The notes under the pieces were generated by a model that saw nothing but the letters and a program-made list of their open reading frames with translations, did not search any database and was not told where the DNA came from. From the NCBI GenBank assembly GCA_950097015.1, contig CATNEN010000014.1:558001-622000 (forward strand): 64,000 nt of DNA, read 5' to 3'. Numbering within the stretch: position 1 is the first letter of the stretch; each line of letters begins with the position of its first letter. The position numbers were made by a program, and so were the translations under genes. Source of the stretch: Macrostomum hystrix. Its lineage: Eukaryota; Animalia; Platyhelminthes. Below, one piece after another: positions 42,101 through 49,868 of the stretch.

Positions 42101-43005
42101 GCCACTTGATTTATGCCATGTACTTACGCCAAGCACTTACGCCAAGGCACATTTTGGCCTATACTTACGCCAAGCACTTATGCCAGCCTCCAATCCCAAA
42201 CCAGATTTACGCCGGAGATCTCCGGCGTAAACGACATGATCCGGACTATGGTTAGCGTAGGATTTACTATATTTTACAAATCTAGCGCAATAGTGCACCT
42301 AAAACAACATAGCACAATAGCGCTAAAATCGTGCAGGTGTGGCAACTATGGTTATATCCAAGTTTTAATGTACTTAAAATAAAATAATAAAGCTGTTTAC
42401 AGAGGGTTGTTTAAATTCCAAAGAAAAAACTTAAGTTCTCAAAACAATTTTTAGGCCTACACAAAATAGCAAAGAATAAAGACAATTGCTTGTGGAAAAA
42501 CTGATGATAGTCGAATCTCGATTGTAATAGTTACTAAACTAGCAACAAATAAACCAAAAATTTATTTAAAGCAAAAACACAGGACAGCTGCATTGATTGT
42601 CATTCTCACAACAAAAATTTAAGTGACCAAAATGAAAATGATTTAATAAGGCTAGCTCTTAAATGGGGTCTTTTAAATAATGAATTGACACAGAACTTTC
42701 AAATATACAATATATATAGATATATGTATTGCATTCTTAAAATACAGCCGTCATTTATTCAAGTGACAAGAGTCGAATTTATACTTTAGGTCATTAGTAT
42801 AATCATGATTTTATTTATAAATTAGTGAAAAAAAGTATTCTTAAAAACTGAAAATAGAAAGAAATGAGCATTCAATGATTCTTACCCATGAAACAAGACG
42901 GAGAATTGTAATTGGCCGCTTTACAAACTCCAAAGGATCAAAACTAAAGCCGAAACCCTGAGCCTTTCCGGCACCATAAGCACCACCAGTTCCAGATGAA
43001 TCCAT
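39149..43005 (-). CDS. SYNGR: Synaptogyrin (MARVEL tetraspan vesicle protein). Exons 43005-42886, 40786-40567, 40325-40096, 39313-39149.
   Basis: N-terminal GGAYGAGKA...FDPLEFVKRP.TILRLVSW, then FAVIVFGCI, NACGFGIFVGV, DLGFSG, AFCYLTNKW, RASIAFSFFSI, and a C-terminal QQAPF...FQPPAY. All introns are GT-AG and in frame. Confidence 0.95.
39383..40030. repeat. 22-bp repeat (CATGATCCTCCAGCCACCAACT) in the last synaptogyrin intron.
   Basis: Direct reading; it is the reverse complement of the 45605-46465 array. Confidence 0.95.
41695..42251. mobile_element. Non-autonomous DNA transposon (MITE), 557 bp, in synaptogyrin intron 1.
   Basis: Perfect 17-bp TIR CCATAGTCCGGATCATG at both ends. 8-bp direct TSD TTAGCGTA (41687-94 and 42252-59). 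Many subterminal TTACGCC repeats. Confidence 0.9.
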
Positions 43006-43996
43006 GGAGCAATTAATTCTTGAGCTTTGTATCTAAATGTAACCCTTTTTATATTTTAAGAACGATTTGCTTATATTTGACTTAGATTTTAATTAAAACT
43101 TGTTTTATAAACAAAATAATTGACTCTTTCCAAGCAACAAAAATATTTTTAGTGCAATTTCCAGGTATTATGTATATTAAATAGTTATTGCTTTCTTTTT
43201 AAGCAGTAAAACACATAATATTTAAAAAAAATCTTACTTCGTATGCAGTTAGAAATTGCATTGCTCCACAAAAAAGTAACAACTTTGTTTCTAAGCAAAA
43301 AGATAACAAGCAACCATAAAAAAGCTGCATTTTTAATAACAAAAATTTAACGTCGCAACAACACACGATTTCTAAAGCCCCTATGGCCCTATTTGAGATG
43401 TCGGCAACGGATGTCTTCTGCTATCTATGAAACAACAACTACGACATGGAAGACATGGAGCTAGTAATTAACGTGATGTGTCAAACAAGCAATCCTTTGA
43501 ACTATATAATATTTTCACACTAATTTCACAATACATACATTCAGTGACTAGTCGCAGAAGGTTAAAATGATCTGTGTCAGATTTAACTGTACTGTATATA
43601 TGCAGTAAAGCATTCCTATATTTCATGCAACAGAACCTTAAATAAAATACCTTTCAAATACTATGTGTTTTTCATATTTTATTTTTGCTTATTAATATAT
43701 TTCATTGCTTCTTATTTTTTTTAAGTAAAACTATTTAAGTACAAACACAGTCATCTAAACATTTTGTATAAAAAATTTACAACTAAAAATGTTTCTTTCT
43801 TGAACAAATGTGAAAGTTTTAACTATATTAAATATTCCTATAAATTTTGATTTCCTACAATTTTGATTGTCACTTGAAACTCAGATGTTAATTTTTATTC
43901 ATTTGTTTTCTAAAAAACTGTTATTAATAATAATAGGTTAAACTGAGTAGGACATCAAATGCTTTTTTCACTCCAGCTGTGCATGCTACAACAAAA

Positions 43997-46900
43997 ATGC
44001 TTCGCAAAGTTTCTGAGATTCTGCTAGACATGCCCTGCGGAACCCAGCAGGCCGAGATGCAGCTATGCCTTGGAGACATTACAAAAATTGAGCCTGGTGG
44101 CCAGCCATATGATGTCATCATGCTTTCTGCATTTGCTGGTGAGCTTAAAGAAAGGAACTACTTACTAGCTACCTCTGCAACAAAGTGAGTTTTGAGTAGA
44201 TTTTATGCAGCTGGGTATGTTGTGCACTCTTGCTCCCCACAGCTGACTACTCAGCAGTGCCATCAACTCTCATTGGCGCCCTCACACACCCCACAGCTGA
44301 CTACTCAGCAGTGCCATCAACTCTCATTGGCGCCCTCAAACACCAGTTCAACCTGAGCGTGCGCGACCTGGCCAAGAACAAGGCCGAAGATCTGCGCAGC
44401 AACTTCAACTGTTGGATCTCAAAGCCCCTGCCGCCTGAACTTCCCTACAAGTGAGACAACTGTACAAGCCCTGCTATTGATTGCTGATGTTTTACTAATC
44501 AGGGGTAACTAGAATTCCCTCTACTGCTGCGCAGGCGAGTTCTGTGTTTCGAGCAGCACGTGATTTCGGGTCGAGAGCGCAGCCCTGAGAAGGCTGTTGG
44601 CGAAATCTTCCGCGCCATGTTCACGGTGTTCGCTGACAACATGAGTGTGATCAGCCCGCTGCTGGCCACTGGCTGCCAGCGGGCCTCCAAGTCGCGCATC
44701 ATGCACGCCCTGGTCACGGCCTGGCACACCTGGATCAGCATCGGCCTGCCCATGAGGCGCTACACTCTCGTCATCTACACCTCCAAGCTGGCCGTAGAGA
44801 GCCTCTCCGAGGACGACCGGAAGGCTGTGCAGGAGTTTCAGCGGCTCAAATCAGCCTTTGAAAGTCGGCACAAGAAGCATGCGGTGAGATCCTGATCTTG
44901 CATTTCGCTTGCACTTCAGAACCTTCAGCCGGACCCTGAACTCCTCGCTATGTAAAACCCGCAGCCTGTGCCCATCGAGACGGACCTGCTTGTATTCTGC
45001 TGCGAGAAGGACCTCCAGTTCCTGGAGCGGGCAACCCGCAGCCTGAAAGCCCGCGAGAAAAGTCTGCGCTGCCGCAAGGTCGTCCATTCTGACGACAGCA
45101 GCAGCAGTGGGGGCGGCTCCTCAGGCGACGAGGCCGCTGAAAGCGCAATGGCCACATCTGCCATCGACGCTCGCCGCTCCGAGATGCTGGGCAGCCGCCT
45201 CGTGGTCTGCCTCCTGTCGCAGGCTTTCCTGGCGAGTCGCACCTGCGTCGAGGACTTTAACGTGGCGATGTGCCTGGCGCACACCCGTCGGCACCCCTTC
45301 ATGCCCGTCTGCCTGGAGCGGCTGGCAAGCCTGCCCACCTACATGTCCCTCATCCAATGGATCGACTGTCGGCCGAAGCCAAGCGATGAACCAGGCCTGG
45401 ACAAACTGCAGGCGGCCATCGGGGAGATCGGCAGCCGGCTTGAACAGCTCAACATTGCAGGTGAGCGGCCAGCCGTCACCATCTGAAATCTGAAAGGCTG
45501 CCTTCGTTTTCATAGCTACCAGTTCATAGCTGTCATAGCTGAGGTTGATAAAGAGCTGCTTGTTTCATTGGTAACGGTAAGATCAGGGAGAGGGGTCGTT
45601 GCTTGGAAGATCAAGAGTTGGTGGCTGAAGGATCAGGAGTTGGTGGCTGGAGGATGATCATTCGGTGGCTGGAGGATCAAGAGTTGGTGGCTGGAGGATC
45701 ATGAGTTGGTGGCTGGAGGATCATGATTTAGTGGCTGGAGGATCATGATTTGGTGGCTATAGGATCAGGAGTTGGTGGCTGGAGGATCATGATTTGGTCG
45801 GCTGGAGGATCAGGAGTGTTTGGCTGGAGGATCAGGAGTTGGTGGCTGGAGGATCATGATTCGGTGGCTGGAGGATCAGGAGTTGTTGGCTGGAGAATCA
45901 GGAGTTGGTGGCTGGAAGATCATGATTCGGTGGCTGGAGGATCAGGAGTTGGTGGCTGGAGGATCAGGAGTTGGTGGCTGGAGGATCATGATTTGGTGGC
46001 TGGAGGATCATGATTTGGTGGCTGGAGGATTATGATTTGGTGGCTGGAGGATCAAGAGTTGGTGGCTGGAGGATCAGGAGTTGGTGGCTGGAGGATCATG
46101 ATTCGGTGGCTATATGATCAGGAGTTGGTGGCTGGAGGCTCATGATTTGGTCGGCTGGAGGATCAGGAGTGTTTGGCTGGAGGATCAGGAGTTGGTGGCT
46201 GGAGGATCATGATTCGGTGGCTGGAGGATCAGGAGTTGTTGGCTGGAGGATCAGGAGTTGGTGGCTGGAAGATCATGATTCGGTGGCTGGAGGATCAGGA
46301 GTTGGTGGCTGGAGGATCATGAATTGGTGGCTGGAGGATCATGATTTGGTGGCTGGGGGATCATGAGTTGGTGGCTGGAGGATCATGAATTGGTGGCTGG
46401 AGGATCATGATTTGGTGGCTGGGGGATCATGAGTTGGTGGCTGGAGGATCATGAGGTGGTGGCTGAAACTTGGCGCCTTTCCTCATCAGACGCATTCAAG
46501 ATGTAACTCTTTCCAACTCGCCCGCTTTAAAGGCGCAAACGACGGGCCATCCAAGCAGCGCTCGAGTGTTTCTGCGGTGTCTGGCAGAGGAGGCAGTGGC
46601 TACGACATCTTCATCTCGTACTCGCACCGCAACTCTGCAGCGGTAGAGCCGTTCCTCGCCGAACTGCGCCTCGCCTGTCGTGGCCTGCGCATCTTCTTTG
46701 ACAAGCAGGGCATCCAGACTGGCTTCTCCTGGATGGAGACCATCTACTCAGCCGTTAGCGGCAGCCGCCTCATCATCGCCTTCGTGACGCCCGATTACGC
46801 CAAGTCGTCAGTCTGCCTGGAAGAGTTTGGCGTCGCTTCCCTGCTGCATCGCAGTGACCATCACCAATCTTTGCTGCTGCCTATTTGCCTGGAGCCTCTG

Positions 46901-49868
46901 GGGCCCGCCTGCCCACCCATGCTGCAGTCCGTGGCCCGCTGGATTAACGCCACCACTGCTAGGGAGCAGGCCGTCAAGCGGGTGGCCGCGGCTGTTGCAA
47001 AAGTGATGACGGCCAGGTCTGGGGACAAAAAGGCCGCCCACCTCAAGGAACAGCTGTTTCCCGACTGTCACGTGAGCTGTTACCTGTCTTTCAAGTAAGC
47101 TATTCCCAAACTGTCACGTGAGCTGTTCCCCGACAGTCACACGAGCTGTTCCCCGACAGTCACATGAGCTGTTCCCTGACAGTCACATGAGCTGTTACCT
47201 GTCTTTCAAGTAAGCTATTCCCAAACTGTCACGTGAGCTGTTCCCCGACAGTCACACGAGCTGTTCCCCGACAGTCACATGAGCTGTTCCCTGACAGTCA
47301 CATGAGCTGTTCCCTGACAGTCACATGAGCTGTTCCCTGACAGTCACATGAGCTGTCCCCCGACAGTCACATGAGCTGTTCCCTGACAGTCACATGAGCT
47401 GTCCCCCGACAGTCACGTGAGCTGTTCCCCGACAGTCACATGAGCTGTTCCCTGACAGTCACATGAGCTGTTCCCTGACAGTCACATGAGCTGTTCCCTG
47501 ACAGTCACATGAGCTGTTCCCTGACAGTCACATGAGCTGTTCCCTGACAGTCACATGAGCTGTTCCCTGACAGTCACATGAGCTGTTCCCTGACAGTCAC
47601 ATGAGCTGTTCCCTGACAGTCACATGAGCTGTTTCCTGACAGTCACATGAGCTGTTCCCTGACAGTCACATGAGCTGTTCCCCGACAGTCACATGAGCTG
47701 TTCCCCGACAGTCACGTGAGCTGTTCCCCGACAGTCACATGAGCTGTTCCCCGACAGTCACATGAGCTGTTCCCCGACAGTCACATGAGCTGTTCCCCGA
47801 CAGTCACGTGAGCTGTTCCCCGACAGTCACATGAGCTGTTCCCCGACAGTCACATGAGCTGTTCCCCGACAGTCACATGAGCTGTTCCCCGACAGTCACA
47901 TGAGCTGTTCCCCGACAGTCACATGAGCTGTTCCCCGACAGTCACATGAGCTGTTCCCCGACAGTCACATGAGCTGTTCCCCGACAGTCACATGAGCTGT
48001 TCCCCGACAGTCACATGAGCTGTTCCCCGACAGTCACATGAGCTGTTCCCCGACAGTCACATGAGCTGTTCCCCGACAGTCACGTGAGCTGTTCCCTGAC
48101 AGTCACATGAGCTGTTCCCCGACAGTAACGTGAGCTTTTCCCCGACTAGCTATTCACTGACTTTTGATGCCTTCATAGATTGGCCTATCTCAATAAATCA
48201 CTGTCCGCACCCACAGAACCTGTCCCAGTTGATGTCCCAGGTGGACAAGCTGCGTCAGTCTCTGCTGGGCACGAAGCTGTCACTGCTGAGCGCTGCCAGC
48301 TTCGGCGCTTTTCGCAAGGCGGCCGCTGCTGCAGCGGAGGCGAGGCCGCTGGCAGTCGTGGACCTCTGTCACGTGGCCCTGGTGTGCCACCCAGATGAGC
48401 GGGAGCCGCTGGTTGAGGCGGTTCGCCTGCAAGCCGAAGCTTTCGCACCTGACCTGCAGGTGCGCTGCCTGGATTCCGACGAGGCGCATGACGACCTTGA
48501 GGCTCTGGAGCAGGTGGGCCATCGCTGCTGCTGGCTTTCCCGCAGCTCTGCTTCCTCCACAAATCCATTCAGCACTTCTCAGCATAAAATTGCTATCCAA
48601 AAACCCTTTGTCAGGCTAGTGTTGTGGTCCTGTTCCTGTCGCCGGTGTTCCTGACCTCTGCTCGCCTCAGCGGCCTGCTCTACCTGGCTCTGTGCCGCAA
48701 GCGGGCCCGCTCGGGCAACGTGCTGCTGTTCTGCCTGAACCCACTGCCACGCCATCCCGCCTTCCTGAGCCTCCTGCCAATCAGTGCCAGCATGGAGGAC
48801 ATCAAGGTGAGAACCTGTATTGAAGTTAAAGCTCTGATGAGTTCAACTGGAAGCTGAACTCAATGATAAAATGTGTGATTAAGAATATTTTAATGTTCGG
48901 TTTTCACCGAACCTGCTTTTCATTGAAGCCTGCCAAATTAAATGATGGCAGTTTTCTTCTGAGTTGAATGTGAGCAGTTTCCGTCTGAGTTGAATGTGAG
49001 CAGTTTCCGTCTGAGTTGAATGTGAGCAGTTTCCGTCTGAGTTGAATGTGAGCAGTTTCCGTCTGAGTTGAATGTGAGCAGTTTCCGTCTGAGTTGAATG
49101 TGAGCAGTTTCCGTCTGAGTTGAATGTGAGCAGTTTTCTTCTGAGTTGAATGTGAGCAGTTTCCGTCTGAGTTGAATGTGAGCAGTTTCCGTCTGAGTTG
49201 AATGTGAGCAGTTTTCTTCTGAGTTGAATGTGAGCAGTTTCCGTCTGAGTTGAATGTGAGCAGTTTTCTTCTGAGTTGAATGTGAGCAGTTTCCGTCTGA
49301 GTTGAATGTGAGCAGTTTCCGTCTGAGTTGAATGTGAGCAGTTTCCGTCTGAGTTGAATGTGAGCAGTTTCCATCTTGAGTTGAATGTTGAACGTCAAGC
49401 TCGATTCCTCGAACCCGCAGCTCCTTGCCGCGCAGTACAACAGCCACCAGAAGGAGCTGCAGGAATACATTGGCGAGGCCGCTCGCAAGCAGTTCTACAA
49501 GCTAACACACGCCGAGTGCGTCTTTGCCATCTGTTGCGCTCGGGCCATCGTTGAGCGCCTTTTTGGGTGAGGCCACAGGCGACTCTGGGACAGCTCTCTC
49601 TCTGTGCTCTGTTATCTCTGTGTGCCTTCAGCGATTTCCCCAGAGCCCCAATTATCGCCGCTGTGACTCCCCCGCAGGCTGCCTGAGAGCTTGGCCACCA
49701 CCCCGGCGGTGCTGGTGTCACTGTCGGAGCTGGCCTCCTGTGCCTACCTGACGAATCCAGATAAGCCGAAGCCGTGGAAGCAGGTGAGCACTGCGGCTTA
49801 TCTGATCAGACATTCTGTGTCACTAAAGCCCTTTTACCTAACCTTTGTAGGCAATGGAGCCTATCTAA
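43997..49868 (+). CDS. Macro-like domain + three TIR domains, ~790-810 aa. Exons 43997-44138, 44243(or 44297)-44450, 44535-44883, 44965-45460, 46533-47002, 48217-48513, 48615-48806, 49421-49566, 49678-49783, 49851-49868.
   Basis: Macro-like motifs LCLGDITK, DVIMLSAF and SVISPLLATG. TIR1 DLLVFCCEKD...LSQAFLASRTCVEDF; TIR2 YDIFISYSHRN...IFFD..GIQTG.SW...TPDYAKSSVCLEEF; TIR3 HVALVCHPDE...VVLFLSPVFLTS. Ten GT-AG-bounded exons join in one frame. The exon 5 donor and the last exons are less sure. Confidence 0.85.
45605..46465. repeat. ~22-bp repeat (AGTTGGTGGCTGGAGGATC(A/C)..) in Macro-TIR intron 4.
   Basis: Direct reading. Confidence 0.95.
47055..48127. repeat. 23-bp repeat (GAGCTGTTCCCCGACAGTCACAT) in Macro-TIR intron 5.
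   Basis: Direct reading. Confidence 0.97.
48945..49390. repeat. 26-bp repeat (TCTGAGTTGAATGTGAGCAGTTTCCG) in Macro-TIR intron 7.
   Basis: Direct reading. Confidence 0.97.

What the first reader, a model, noticed from the sequence alone, without database searches (positions are those of the whole stretch)
43997..49868. Macro-TIR-TIR-TIR protein: possible Thoeris-like NAD+/ADP-ribose signal writer and reader fused in one animal gene
Seen: ten exons splice into a ~800-aa protein with an N-terminal macro-like fold (GDIT, DVIMLSAF, PLLATG) and three TIR domains, with no LRR, ARM, SAM, death or TM segment visible. TIR2 is a bacterial-style TIR_2 (YDIFISYSH...CLEEF). Established: many TIR domains are Glu-dependent NADases that make ADPR-derived messengers, macro domains bind ADPR, and in type II Thoeris a TIR enzyme makes His-ADPR that a macro-domain effector senses. 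Inference: this could be a self-contained or feedback-regulated innate-immune or stress-signalling module. The macro motif has S-A-F where hydrolytic macrodomains have N-A-A-N, which suggests a reader. I do not know of a characterised animal protein with this architecture, but I cannot search to confirm that.
Basis: partly seen in the sequence, partly recalled or inferred. Interest (0 to 1): 0.88.

Follow-up and report, generated by a model that had tools for sequence, protein, structure and literature searches.

The report
Macro domain fused to three TIRs
A real, expressed flatworm gene joins a macro (ADP-ribose-binding type) domain to three TIR domains, only one of which keeps the enzyme's key glutamate; it belongs to an old, untested family found in many invertebrates and, as a shorter form, in bacteria, and may be a self-regulating NAD-cleaving immune switch.

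Summary
Ten GT-AG coding exons (43997-49868, + strand) give an 812-aa protein. RNA contigs confirm the joints of exons 1 to 5 and carry the Macrostomum lignano spliced leader at 43976, so the N-terminus is complete.

- **Macro domain:** residues 1-196 model confidently as a macro fold. The nearest solved structures are macroH2A and PARP9/14 (Z about 14); Thoeris ThsA macro is further away (Z 11). Pfam's Macro and ThsA_Macro models do not match.
- **TIR domains:** three are real. At the catalytic position TIR2 has Glu478, TIR1 has Asp312 and TIR3 has Leu680.
- **Family:** the gene is not unique. Macro-TIR-TIR-TIR orthologues, all uncharacterised, occur in molluscs, brachiopod, nemertean, echinoderms, hemichordates and a placozoan. 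A roughly 340-aa Macro-TIR protein occurs in at least 72 prokaryotic species as a stand-alone gene that nearly always keeps the Glu.
- **Prior record:** a 2026 preprint's supplementary table lists the Macrostomum paralogue with a MACRO domain. It was neither tested nor discussed.

Best reading, which is inference: the macro domain senses an ADP-ribose-type ligand and gates a TIR NADase, and the two glutamate-less TIRs act as scaffolds. A specifically Thoeris type II (His-ADPR) relationship is not supported.

The parts
43975..43976 (+). AG acceptor for the spliced leader (trans-splice site); the mRNA body starts here
   Evidence: RNA contigs carry 21 non-genomic letters before 43976. These letters are absent from the window and equal the 3' end of the 35-nt M. 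lignano spliced leader given in PMC8629364.
43997..44138 (+). coding exon 1 (aa 1-47 plus 1 nt): start codon, macro strands, GDIT with Asp27 (44075-44077)
44297..44450 (+). coding exon 2 (macro loop 1 and the conserved hairpin with D79-L80-R81 and C86-W87-x-S89)
   Evidence: Joint read in RNA contigs; conserved columns.
44535..44883 (+). coding exon 3 (macro core: C103-F104-E105, F124-R125, loop 2 PLLATGCQR with Gly145)
44965..45460 (+). coding exon 4 = TIR1 (aa 222-372), with Asp312 (45253-45255) at the catalytic position and a Ser/Gly-rich insert
   Evidence: Pfam TIR_2 35.0 bits against a cut-off of 28; alignment; the preprint table gives ASP for the paralogue.
46533..47071 (+). coding exon 5 = linker plus the whole of TIR2 (aa 403-540), with Glu478 (46823-46825) in CLEEF
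   Evidence: Pfam TIR_2 67.3 bits, E 2.3e-18. CLEEF aligns with CLEEL of Roq1, CLDEL of AT1G72930 and CWDEL of Cat1. The acceptor at 46533 is read in RNA.
48217..48513 (+). coding exon 6: helical linker and first half of TIR3
48615..48806 (+). coding exon 7: second half of TIR3, with Leu680 (48675-48677) at the catalytic position
   Evidence: the preprint table gives LEU for the paralogue.
49421..49566 (+). coding exon 8: C-terminal tail, no recognised domain
49678..49783 (+). coding exon 9: C-terminal tail
49851..49868 (+). coding exon 10: last five codons (AMEPI) and the stop codon
   Evidence: the paralogue protein also ends in MEPI.

Best explanation
The locus is a spliced-leader trans-spliced, expressed gene of a Macrostomum flatworm. 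It encodes a soluble 89-kDa protein of the form macro domain + TIR1 + TIR2 + TIR3 + a short tail.

Most likely mechanism (inferred, not shown): the macro domain is a non-hydrolytic pocket for an ADP-ribose-type nucleotide. Ligand binding controls the packing of the TIR domains and so the NAD+-cleaving or cyclising activity of TIR2, the only TIR with the catalytic Glu (E478). TIR1 (Asp) and TIR3 (Leu) would serve as built-in non-catalytic partners for the TIR-TIR contacts that active TIR enzymes need. Because TIR enzymes make ADPR-type products, the macro domain could read the product of its own or a neighbouring molecule, giving feedback.

The module descends from a stand-alone prokaryotic Macro-TIR protein, in which a conserved macro pocket sits next to a Glu-bearing TIR. 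That places it with other sensor-fused TIR effectors.
For: Shown:
- Gene model and expression. The N-terminus is complete because of the spliced leader.
- Macro fold: AF2 pLDDT 85.5, pTM 0.81. 182 PDB matches at E<=1e-3; the 50 listed are macro domains or macro-fusion constructs. Z 14.2 to the ADPR-bound macroH2A macrodomain of Capsaspora (7ny7).
- A family profile weakly aligns GDIT with GDIT of Af1521, and PLLATGnqG with the loop FPAVSAGIYG of Af1521 and PLLSTG of alphavirus nsP3.
- The window's protein keeps 33 of 37 macro columns that are at least 85% conserved.
- TIR2 has Glu in the column of the plant and CRISPR TIRs Roq1, AT1G72930 and Cat1.
- There are three TIRs in this protein and in all full-length orthologues.
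- 72 prokaryotic loci encode Macro-TIR with no conserved neighbour, and Glu is kept in 54 of 57.
- The same macro type is also fused to NUDIX, to a ThsB-like TIR, to FHA and to a protein annotated as an ADP-ribosyltransferase, which points to NAD/ADPR chemistry.
- Metazoan macro domains form one clade nested among prokaryotic ones.

From the literature: ThsA macro domains bind ADPR or imidazole adenine dinucleotide and then oligomerise (PMC11204291).

From my own knowledge: the need of TIR NADases for TIR-TIR assembly, and sensor-gated TIRs such as SARM1 and TIR-STING.
Against: - No biochemical data exist for any member.
- Pfam Macro and ThsA_Macro HMMs do not match, so ligand binding is inferred from fold and two motifs only.
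- In this species loop 2 reads GCQR where the family has GNQG, and loop 1 has PST where the family has PGT.
- The Macrostomum branch is long (1.16 changes per site). TIR3 has lost the Glu that most orthologues keep, so this copy may be relaxed or may work differently from its relatives.
- A Glu at the right column does not guarantee activity; the 2026 preprint notes Glu-bearing TIRs without activity.
- I could not inspect coordinates to see whether the pocket is open or closed.
Confidence: 0.45

Rival explanations
1. The macro domain is an enzyme (eraser), not a sensor. It would hydrolyse the TIR product or remove ADP-ribose from a target, making the protein a self-limiting writer/eraser pair. 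This is how macro domains act beside sirtuin or ART toxins.
For: - Macro domains fused to or paired with NAD+-using enzymes are often hydrolases (PMC9503650).
- The same macro type is fused to a protein annotated as an ADP-ribosyltransferase and to NUDIX.
- Several invariant polar residues (D79, R81, E105, R125, Q147) could form a new active site.
Against: - The MacroD-type Asn and triple-Gly loop are replaced by S-A-F-(P/A) and P-(G/S)-T. This reading rests on my own motif alignment and the DSSP of the model, because the HMMER alignment stops before this segment.
- The nearest structures are macroH2A and PARP9/14 macro domains.
Confidence: 0.2
2. The protein is a non-enzymatic adaptor. The TIRs would act only as protein-protein docking modules in Toll/IL-1-like signalling, and the macro domain would tether the protein to ADP-ribosylated proteins or poly-ADP-ribose.
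For: - Two of three TIRs lack Glu here, and TIR1 has Gln in most orthologues.
- Conserved invertebrate TIR families have been proposed as adaptors (PMC6321704).
- Half of the orthologues end in a CaaX-like box, which suggests membrane docking.
Against: Glu is kept in TIR2 in all 12 metazoan members aligned and in 54 of 57 prokaryotic members. That argues for selection on catalysis. The prokaryotic forms have no Toll pathway to plug into.
Confidence: 0.2
3. The gene is a strict type II Thoeris analogue. A TIR would make His-ADPR and the macro domain, a ThsA-type reader, would bind it within the same chain.
For: - A language-model feature search of exon 3 put ThsA_Macro clusters first (score 0.92).
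- One metagenomic relative has a ThsB-like TIR in front of the Macro-TIR pair.
Against: - No Pfam ThsA_Macro hit in any member.
- ThsA macro structures rank at Z 11.1-11.2, below some 45 other macro domains.
- There is no TM effector part.
- The hairpin insert lies at a different place in the fold from the ThsA beta6-beta7 hairpin as described in PMC11204291.
Confidence: 0.05
4. This copy is a decaying duplicate in a polyploid genome and has little function of its own.
For: - M. lignano is a hidden polyploid (PMC10468722 abstract), and a 78% identical paralogue exists.
- The branch is long, the TIR3 Glu is lost, and loop 2 has changed.
Against: - The 812-codon frame across ten exons is intact, and the gene is expressed and correctly spliced.
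- 33 of 37 highly conserved macro columns are kept.
- The same Asp and Leu states occur in the paralogue, so these changes predate the duplication.
Confidence: 0.07

Closest known systems
Type II Thoeris (ThsB TIR + ThsA TM-macro)
   Same: It pairs a TIR enzyme with a macro domain that reads an ADPR-derived molecule. Ligand-bound ThsA macro domains oligomerise (PMC11204291).
   Different: Thoeris uses two proteins in an operon. There the macro domain sits on a membrane effector, not on the TIR. Here there is one chain and no TM segment, the macro domain belongs to another subfamily (no PF20016 hit, Z 11 against 14 for macroH2A), and the prokaryotic relatives have no partner gene.
Sensor-fused TIR NADases: SARM1 (ARM-SAM-TIR), TIR-STING, TIR-SAVED, TIR-SLOG
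   Same: A small-molecule-binding domain in the same chain as a Glu-bearing TIR, with sensor and effector in one protein. This is the working model adopted here, and it rests on my own knowledge of these systems.
   Different: The sensor is a macro domain. There are three tandem TIRs, two of them without Glu. No SAM or other oligomerisation domain is present.
macroH2A1.1 and PARP9/PARP14 macro domains
   Same: These are the nearest solved folds (Z 13.4-14.2). The Asp after the first strand and the Gly loop are shared.
   Different: Sequence identity is only 11-14%. This family has its own invariant hairpin (D-L-R ... C-W-x-S) and a C-F-E strand, and it is fused to TIRs.
Prokaryotic stand-alone Macro-TIR proteins (about 340 aa, uncharacterised)
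   Same: Direct homologues over the macro domain and the adjacent TIR (30-40% identity), with the same invariant columns.
   Different: They have a single TIR that keeps Glu, and some carry extra NUDIX, ThsB-like TIR or FHA domains. The animal form has tripled the TIR and usually has Gln in the macro-adjacent one.
Conserved invertebrate TIR families ('ecTIR-DC', Gerdol et al. 2017)
   Same: Invertebrate-wide cytosolic TIR proteins that seem to be absent from vertebrates (PMC6321704).
   Different: I could not read the defining paper, so whether this family is one of the numbered classes is unknown.

Membership tests
TIR domain (Pfam TIR_2, PF13676) | Score above the Pfam gathering threshold (28 bits) | tested here: met
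   TIR2 scores 67.3 bits and TIR1 35.0 bits. TIR3 of the Macrostomum paralogue scores only 15.7 bits, but 5 of 10 orthologue TIR3s pass, and hhalign of TIR3 against the bacterial TIR gives 99.2%, E 3.6e-19.
Catalytic TIR (NADase/cyclase) | Glu at the conserved position of the helix after the third strand (C-x-x-E) | tested here: met
   Met for TIR2 only: E478 aligns with the Glu column of Roq1, AT1G72930 and Cat1. TIR1 has D312 and TIR3 has L680.
Catalytic TIR (NADase/cyclase) | Measured NAD+ cleavage or cADPR-isomer production | not testable with these tools
   The family is marked as not tested in Table S3 of bioRxiv 10.64898/2026.04.20.719644.
Macro domain (clan MACRO) | Macro fold | tested here: met
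   AF2 model pLDDT 85.5; Foldseek E 8.9e-8 to macroH2A1.1, with 182 hits at E<=1e-3; Z 14.2.
Macro domain (clan MACRO) | Sequence match to Pfam Macro (PF01661) above its threshold | tested here: not met
   No hit in 29 family members at E<=0.01. The best is one bacterial member at 17.4 bits against a cut-off of 22.
Macro domain (clan MACRO) | Adenine-contacting Asp after strand 1 and a Gly-containing phosphate loop | tested here: inconclusive
   G26-D27 and G145 are invariant in the family and align with GDIT and the SAGIYG loop of Af1521, but the profile E-values are only 0.008-0.3. No coordinates were available to inspect.
ThsA_Macro (PF20016) / type II Thoeris | Match to the PF20016 model | tested here: not met
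   No hit. There is only a language-model resemblance of 0.92.
ThsA_Macro (PF20016) / type II Thoeris | Macro domain joined to N-terminal TM helices, encoded next to a thsB TIR gene | tested here: not met
   No TM segment: the maximum KD19 of 1.77 lies in a TIR core strand. There is no conserved neighbour in 72 prokaryotic loci.
MacroD-type hydrolase | N-A-A-N Asn and the G-G-G loop | tested here: not met
   The equivalent segment reads S-A-F-A-A-D-Y...V-P-S-T here, and S-A-F-P-G-D-Y...P-G-T in the family. The equivalence is my own motif alignment, and the motif itself is recalled from knowledge of Af1521/MacroD.

The most novel reading that the evidence does not exclude
Macro-TIR is an undescribed single-gene immune switch that runs from prokaryotes to animals. 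The macro domain would bind the ADPR-type product of TIR catalysis and thereby recruit or activate further copies. That would give a self-amplifying, all-or-none NAD+ collapse or signal burst from one polypeptide. In animals the tripled TIR would hard-wire the enzyme's partner contacts.
Probability: 0.2. Interest if true: 0.8.

Novelty: new variant of a known kind. Interest (0 to 1): 0.55.

Why it matters
TIR enzymes that make ADPR-based signals are established in bacteria and plants and are only now being reported in animals. What reads such signals in animals is open. This family puts a candidate reader (macro) and a candidate writer (Glu-bearing TIR) in one chain. It is conserved from placozoans to hemichordates, and it has a simple stand-alone prokaryotic counterpart that could be tested for phage defence in E. 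coli. That makes it a tractable entry point. Three things limit the value of this particular locus: the family is already listed in a 2026 data table, this species' copy is among the more diverged, and no function has been shown.

Tried and rejected
- Acceptor at 46490 for exon 5: wrong phase. 46533 fits, and it is the one read in RNA.
- Searching for the 21-nt 5' leader as an upstream exon in the window: absent. It is the spliced leader.
- Pfam on single exons of the N-terminus, and on whole N-terminal domains at E up to 10: no macro-clan hit beyond one sub-threshold match.
- PADLOC: only generic TIR models hit the TIR half of the bacterial homologues, and nothing hits the macro half.
The scan with P0030 alone found nothing. 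A three-sequence alignment worked.
- Conserved operon partner: none.
- TIR-domain tree to find which animal TIR matches the bacterial one: TIR3 is a clade (100), but the rest is unresolved and troubled by long branches; TIR1 monophyly gave p-AU 0.024. I draw no conclusion from it.
- The TIR3 structure model is weak overall (pLDDT 59.9), so it is used only as supporting evidence.
- Literature: no paper contains 'macro-TIR' or its variants. Gerdol et al. 2017 is not held.
- A 54-aa ORF upstream on the minus strand (42841-43005) had no Pfam hit.
Full report
**1. The gene is real.**
Translating the + strand between 43997 and 49868 with canonical GT-AG introns gives one open frame of 2,439 nt, or 812 aa, in ten coding exons. 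My first choice of acceptor for exon 5 (46490) broke the frame; 46533 restores it.

Logan contigs from three runs of one study were laid on 43950-45590. They lack exactly the three predicted introns, each with GT..AG ends. They continue after 45460 with the letters that begin at 46533, and they are 2.67-2.72 kb long. The model predicts 2,481 nt up to the stop codon, so this leaves a 3' UTR of about 200 nt.

They are supported indirectly:
- the frame is continuous across them;
- the paralogue's protein model runs across the equivalents of joints 6/7 and 7/8;
- the same runs hold 0.51-0.52 of the sampled words of 48217-49868, where exons make up 46% of the letters and a 26-nt tandem array makes the intron poor in distinct words.

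**2. Organism and 5' end.**
The contigs carry 21 letters before 43976 that occur nowhere in the window. Together with the G at 43976, they equal the last 22 nt of the 35-nt Macrostomum lignano spliced leader printed in PMC8629364. The best database relative (P0001, UniRef A0A1I8IEA3, 78% identical over aa 1-417) is from M. lignano.

So this is a Macrostomum gene whose mRNA is trans-spliced at the AG at 43975-43976. The first in-frame ATG is 43997. No signal peptide, TM segment or further domain can lie upstream.

**3. The N-terminal domain.**
Pfam finds nothing in the N-terminal exons. A full HMMER scan of 1.8 billion representatives with exon 3 gave 46 relatives. Most are 720-910 aa long and carry the match at residues of about 100-210.

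A 28-sequence alignment (A2) shows a well-conserved domain of about 200 aa. G26, D27, S44, W87, C103, G145, G169 and V178 are invariant, and about 19 more columns are nearly so. AlphaFold2 on the paralogue's residues 1-212 with A2 gave pLDDT 85.5 and pTM 0.81.
- Foldseek against the PDB returned 182 matches at E<=1e-3. The 50 listed are macro domains or proteins crystallised as macro-domain fusions. The best is macroH2A1.1 with ADPR, at E 8.9e-8.
- The second aligner gave Z 14.2-13.4 for macroH2A and for PARP9 and PARP14 macro 2, Z 12-12.7 for Af1521 and MacroD, and Z 11.1-11.2 for the two Thoeris ThsA macro structures.
- A profile search of PDB sequences gave only weak but consistent macro hits (E 0.008-0.3). 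It aligned GDIT with GDIT of Af1521, and the family loop PLLATGnqG with PLLSTG of an alphavirus nsP3 macro domain and FPAVSAGIYG of Af1521.

The window's own protein keeps 33 of the 37 columns that are at least 85% conserved in the family. Its loop 2 reads GCQR where the family has GNQG.

A strongly conserved hairpin (aa 76-89, D-L-R...C-W-x-S) is specific to the family. I could not inspect coordinates to see whether it covers the pocket.

No member reaches Pfam's Macro or ThsA_Macro thresholds. This is therefore a macro-fold subfamily that Pfam does not model.

**4. Three TIRs.**

| Domain | Residues | Evidence that it is a TIR | Residue at the catalytic position |
|---|---|---|---|
| TIR1 | 222-372 | Pfam TIR_2 35.0 bits | D312 in CVEDF; most orthologues have Gln |
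| TIR2 | 403-540 | Pfam TIR_2 67.3 bits, E 2.3e-18 | E478 in CLEEF, aligned to CLEEL of Roq1; Glu in all 12 animal TIR2s aligned |
| TIR3 | about 610-720 | see below | L680; most orthologues keep Glu |

TIR3 is diverged. Pfam gives only 15.7 bits for the paralogue, but five of ten orthologue TIR3s pass the threshold. Profile-profile comparison of the TIR3 alignment with the bacterial TIRs gives 99.2%, E 3.6e-19. A modest AF2 model (pLDDT 59.9, core 70-83) matches almost only TIR structures.

Table S2 of bioRxiv 10.64898/2026.04.20.719644 independently lists ASP296 and LEU554 for the paralogue.

No TM helix is present: the most hydrophobic 19-mer is a TIR3 core strand. The last 90 aa have no recognised domain.

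**5. The family.**
- **Animals.** Proteins with the same Macro-TIR-TIR-TIR order, all named 'uncharacterized', 'hypothetical' or 'TIR domain-containing', or carrying an automatic enzyme name, come from these taxa:
  - gastropods Haliotis, Lottia, Batillaria and Candidula;
  - bivalves Pinctada and Solemya;
  - Octopus;
  - Lingula (brachiopod);
  - Tubulanus (nemertean);
  - echinoderms Lytechinus, Antedon and Amphiura;
  - hemichordates Saccoglossus, Ptychodera and Glandiceps;
  - Trichoplax (placozoan, matched by fold only).
- **Haptophyte.** One haptophyte protein also belongs.
- **Prokaryotes.** A scan of species-representative genomes found 72 loci encoding a Macro-TIR protein of about 340 aa. 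They span Cyanobacteria, Chloroflexota, Planctomycetota, Bacteroidota, Myxococcota, Pseudomonadota, Actinomycetota, Acidobacteriota, Gemmatimonadota and Verrucomicrobiota, plus two Methanotrichaceae archaea.
  - Clustering all ORFs within 4 kb found no conserved neighbour; the best recurring family is in 5 of 72 loci.
  - 54 of 57 keep the catalytic Glu, and they share the macro invariants of the animal proteins.
  - PADLOC models hit only the TIR half.
  - Variants add NUDIX, a ThsB-like TIR, or TIR+FHA in front of the Macro-TIR pair. AlphaFold DB shows the same macro type in a protein annotated as an ADP-ribosyltransferase.
  - A separate bacterial cluster fuses a Pfam-recognised Macro domain to TIR_2.
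- **Tree.** In a macro-domain tree the 16 animal sequences form one clade (SH-aLRT 98). They are joined by the haptophyte (95) and nested among prokaryotic sequences, whose order does not follow taxonomy. The tree was built by a quick search and rooted at the midpoint only for drawing, so no direction of transfer is shown. The Macrostomum branch is long.

**6. Mechanism.**
What is shown is the anatomy: a conserved macro pocket immediately upstream of a Glu-bearing TIR, as a stand-alone gene in prokaryotes, and the same pair plus two more TIRs in animals.

I infer that the macro domain is a nucleotide sensor that gates TIR assembly and catalysis, for four reasons:
- the hydrolase motifs are absent, and the nearest folds are macroH2A and PARP9/14 macro domains;
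- the fusion partners are all NAD/ADPR enzymes;
- ThsA macro domains oligomerise on binding ADPR or IAD (PMC11204291);
- other TIR effectors are gated by sensor domains in the same chain (my own knowledge of SARM1 and TIR-STING).

The Glu-less TIRs would be structural partners. Feedback through the enzyme's own product is possible but untested.

Rival readings are an eraser macro domain, a pure adaptor, a strict His-ADPR Thoeris analogue, and a decaying duplicate. They are scored in their own sections.

**7. Comparison with what is known, and novelty.**
I found no paper that describes or tests this architecture. The literal terms for it return nothing, and the papers on animal and bacterial TIRs that I read do not discuss it.

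It is, however, catalogued. Table S2 of the 2026 preprint gives 'MACRO 18-184' as the additional domain of the Macrostomum paralogue, and Table S3 marks it and the Trichoplax and Lottia members as not tested.

Another note from this scan (s1-084962, unchecked by me) reports a TIR-TIR-SLOG gene in the same genome that belongs to a family covered by a 2026 preprint. Fusions of TIRs with Thoeris-type reader domains in this animal are therefore not isolated.

Whether the family is one of the 'ecTIR-DC' classes of Gerdol et al. 2017 I could not check.

I class the finding as a new variant of a known kind (sensor-fused TIR proteins). Interest is moderate: it is a good, testable candidate, but it is neither unique nor unlisted.

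Noticed in passing
window 44235-44344: A 54-bp tandem duplication (2.0 copies, 98% identical) repeats the acceptor and first 46 nt of coding exon 2. Using the upstream AG would add 18 in-frame residues that duplicate macro loop 1. The RNA contigs use only the downstream acceptor at 44297.
   Followed up: partly
window 45604-46465, 47052-48147, 48948-49388: Three introns are largely filled by minisatellites: 22-nt unit x39, 23-nt unit x48, and 26-nt unit x17. The 23-nt array starts inside the end of exon 5 and repeats its donor-like CACGTGAGC motif many times.
   Followed up: no
window 43975-43999: The spliced leader ends in ATG. That ATG is out of frame with the main start at 43997, and reading on by eye it reaches a stop about 17 codons later, which would give a short upstream ORF.
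   Followed up: partly
orthologues P0005, P0008, P0009, P0012, P0020, P0021, P0042 (C-termini): Seven of 14 full-length animal orthologues end in a CaaX-like box with Leu or Ile last (for example SCVLI, SCSLL, TCKIL). This suggests geranylgeranylation and membrane anchoring. The Macrostomum protein ends in AMEPI and has no such box.
   Followed up: partly
P0037/P0057, P0033, P0039 (metagenomic relatives): The Macro-TIR pair also occurs behind a NUDIX domain, behind a ThsB-like TIR, and behind TIR+FHA in single polypeptides.
   Followed up: partly
L007 and L053 (Methanotrichaceae): Two methanogenic archaea carry Macro-TIR genes that are 46-52% identical to the bacterial query. This is consistent with horizontal spread.
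   Followed up: no
P0034 residues about 380-463: One bacterial Macro-TIR has a C-terminal extension that looks, by eye only, like the effector-associated adaptor domains of STAND-NTPase conflict systems. Pfam found no such domain. In L001 another Macro-TIR gene lies 1.3 kb from a DUF4062-AAA_16-WD40 gene.
   Followed up: partly
P0001 (UniRef A0A1I8IEA3): The UniRef name 'VLIG-type G domain-containing protein' finds no support: Pfam reports only TIR_2 on this protein. Its gene model also skips most of TIR2 and part of the C-terminal tail compared with the window's gene.
   Followed up: partly
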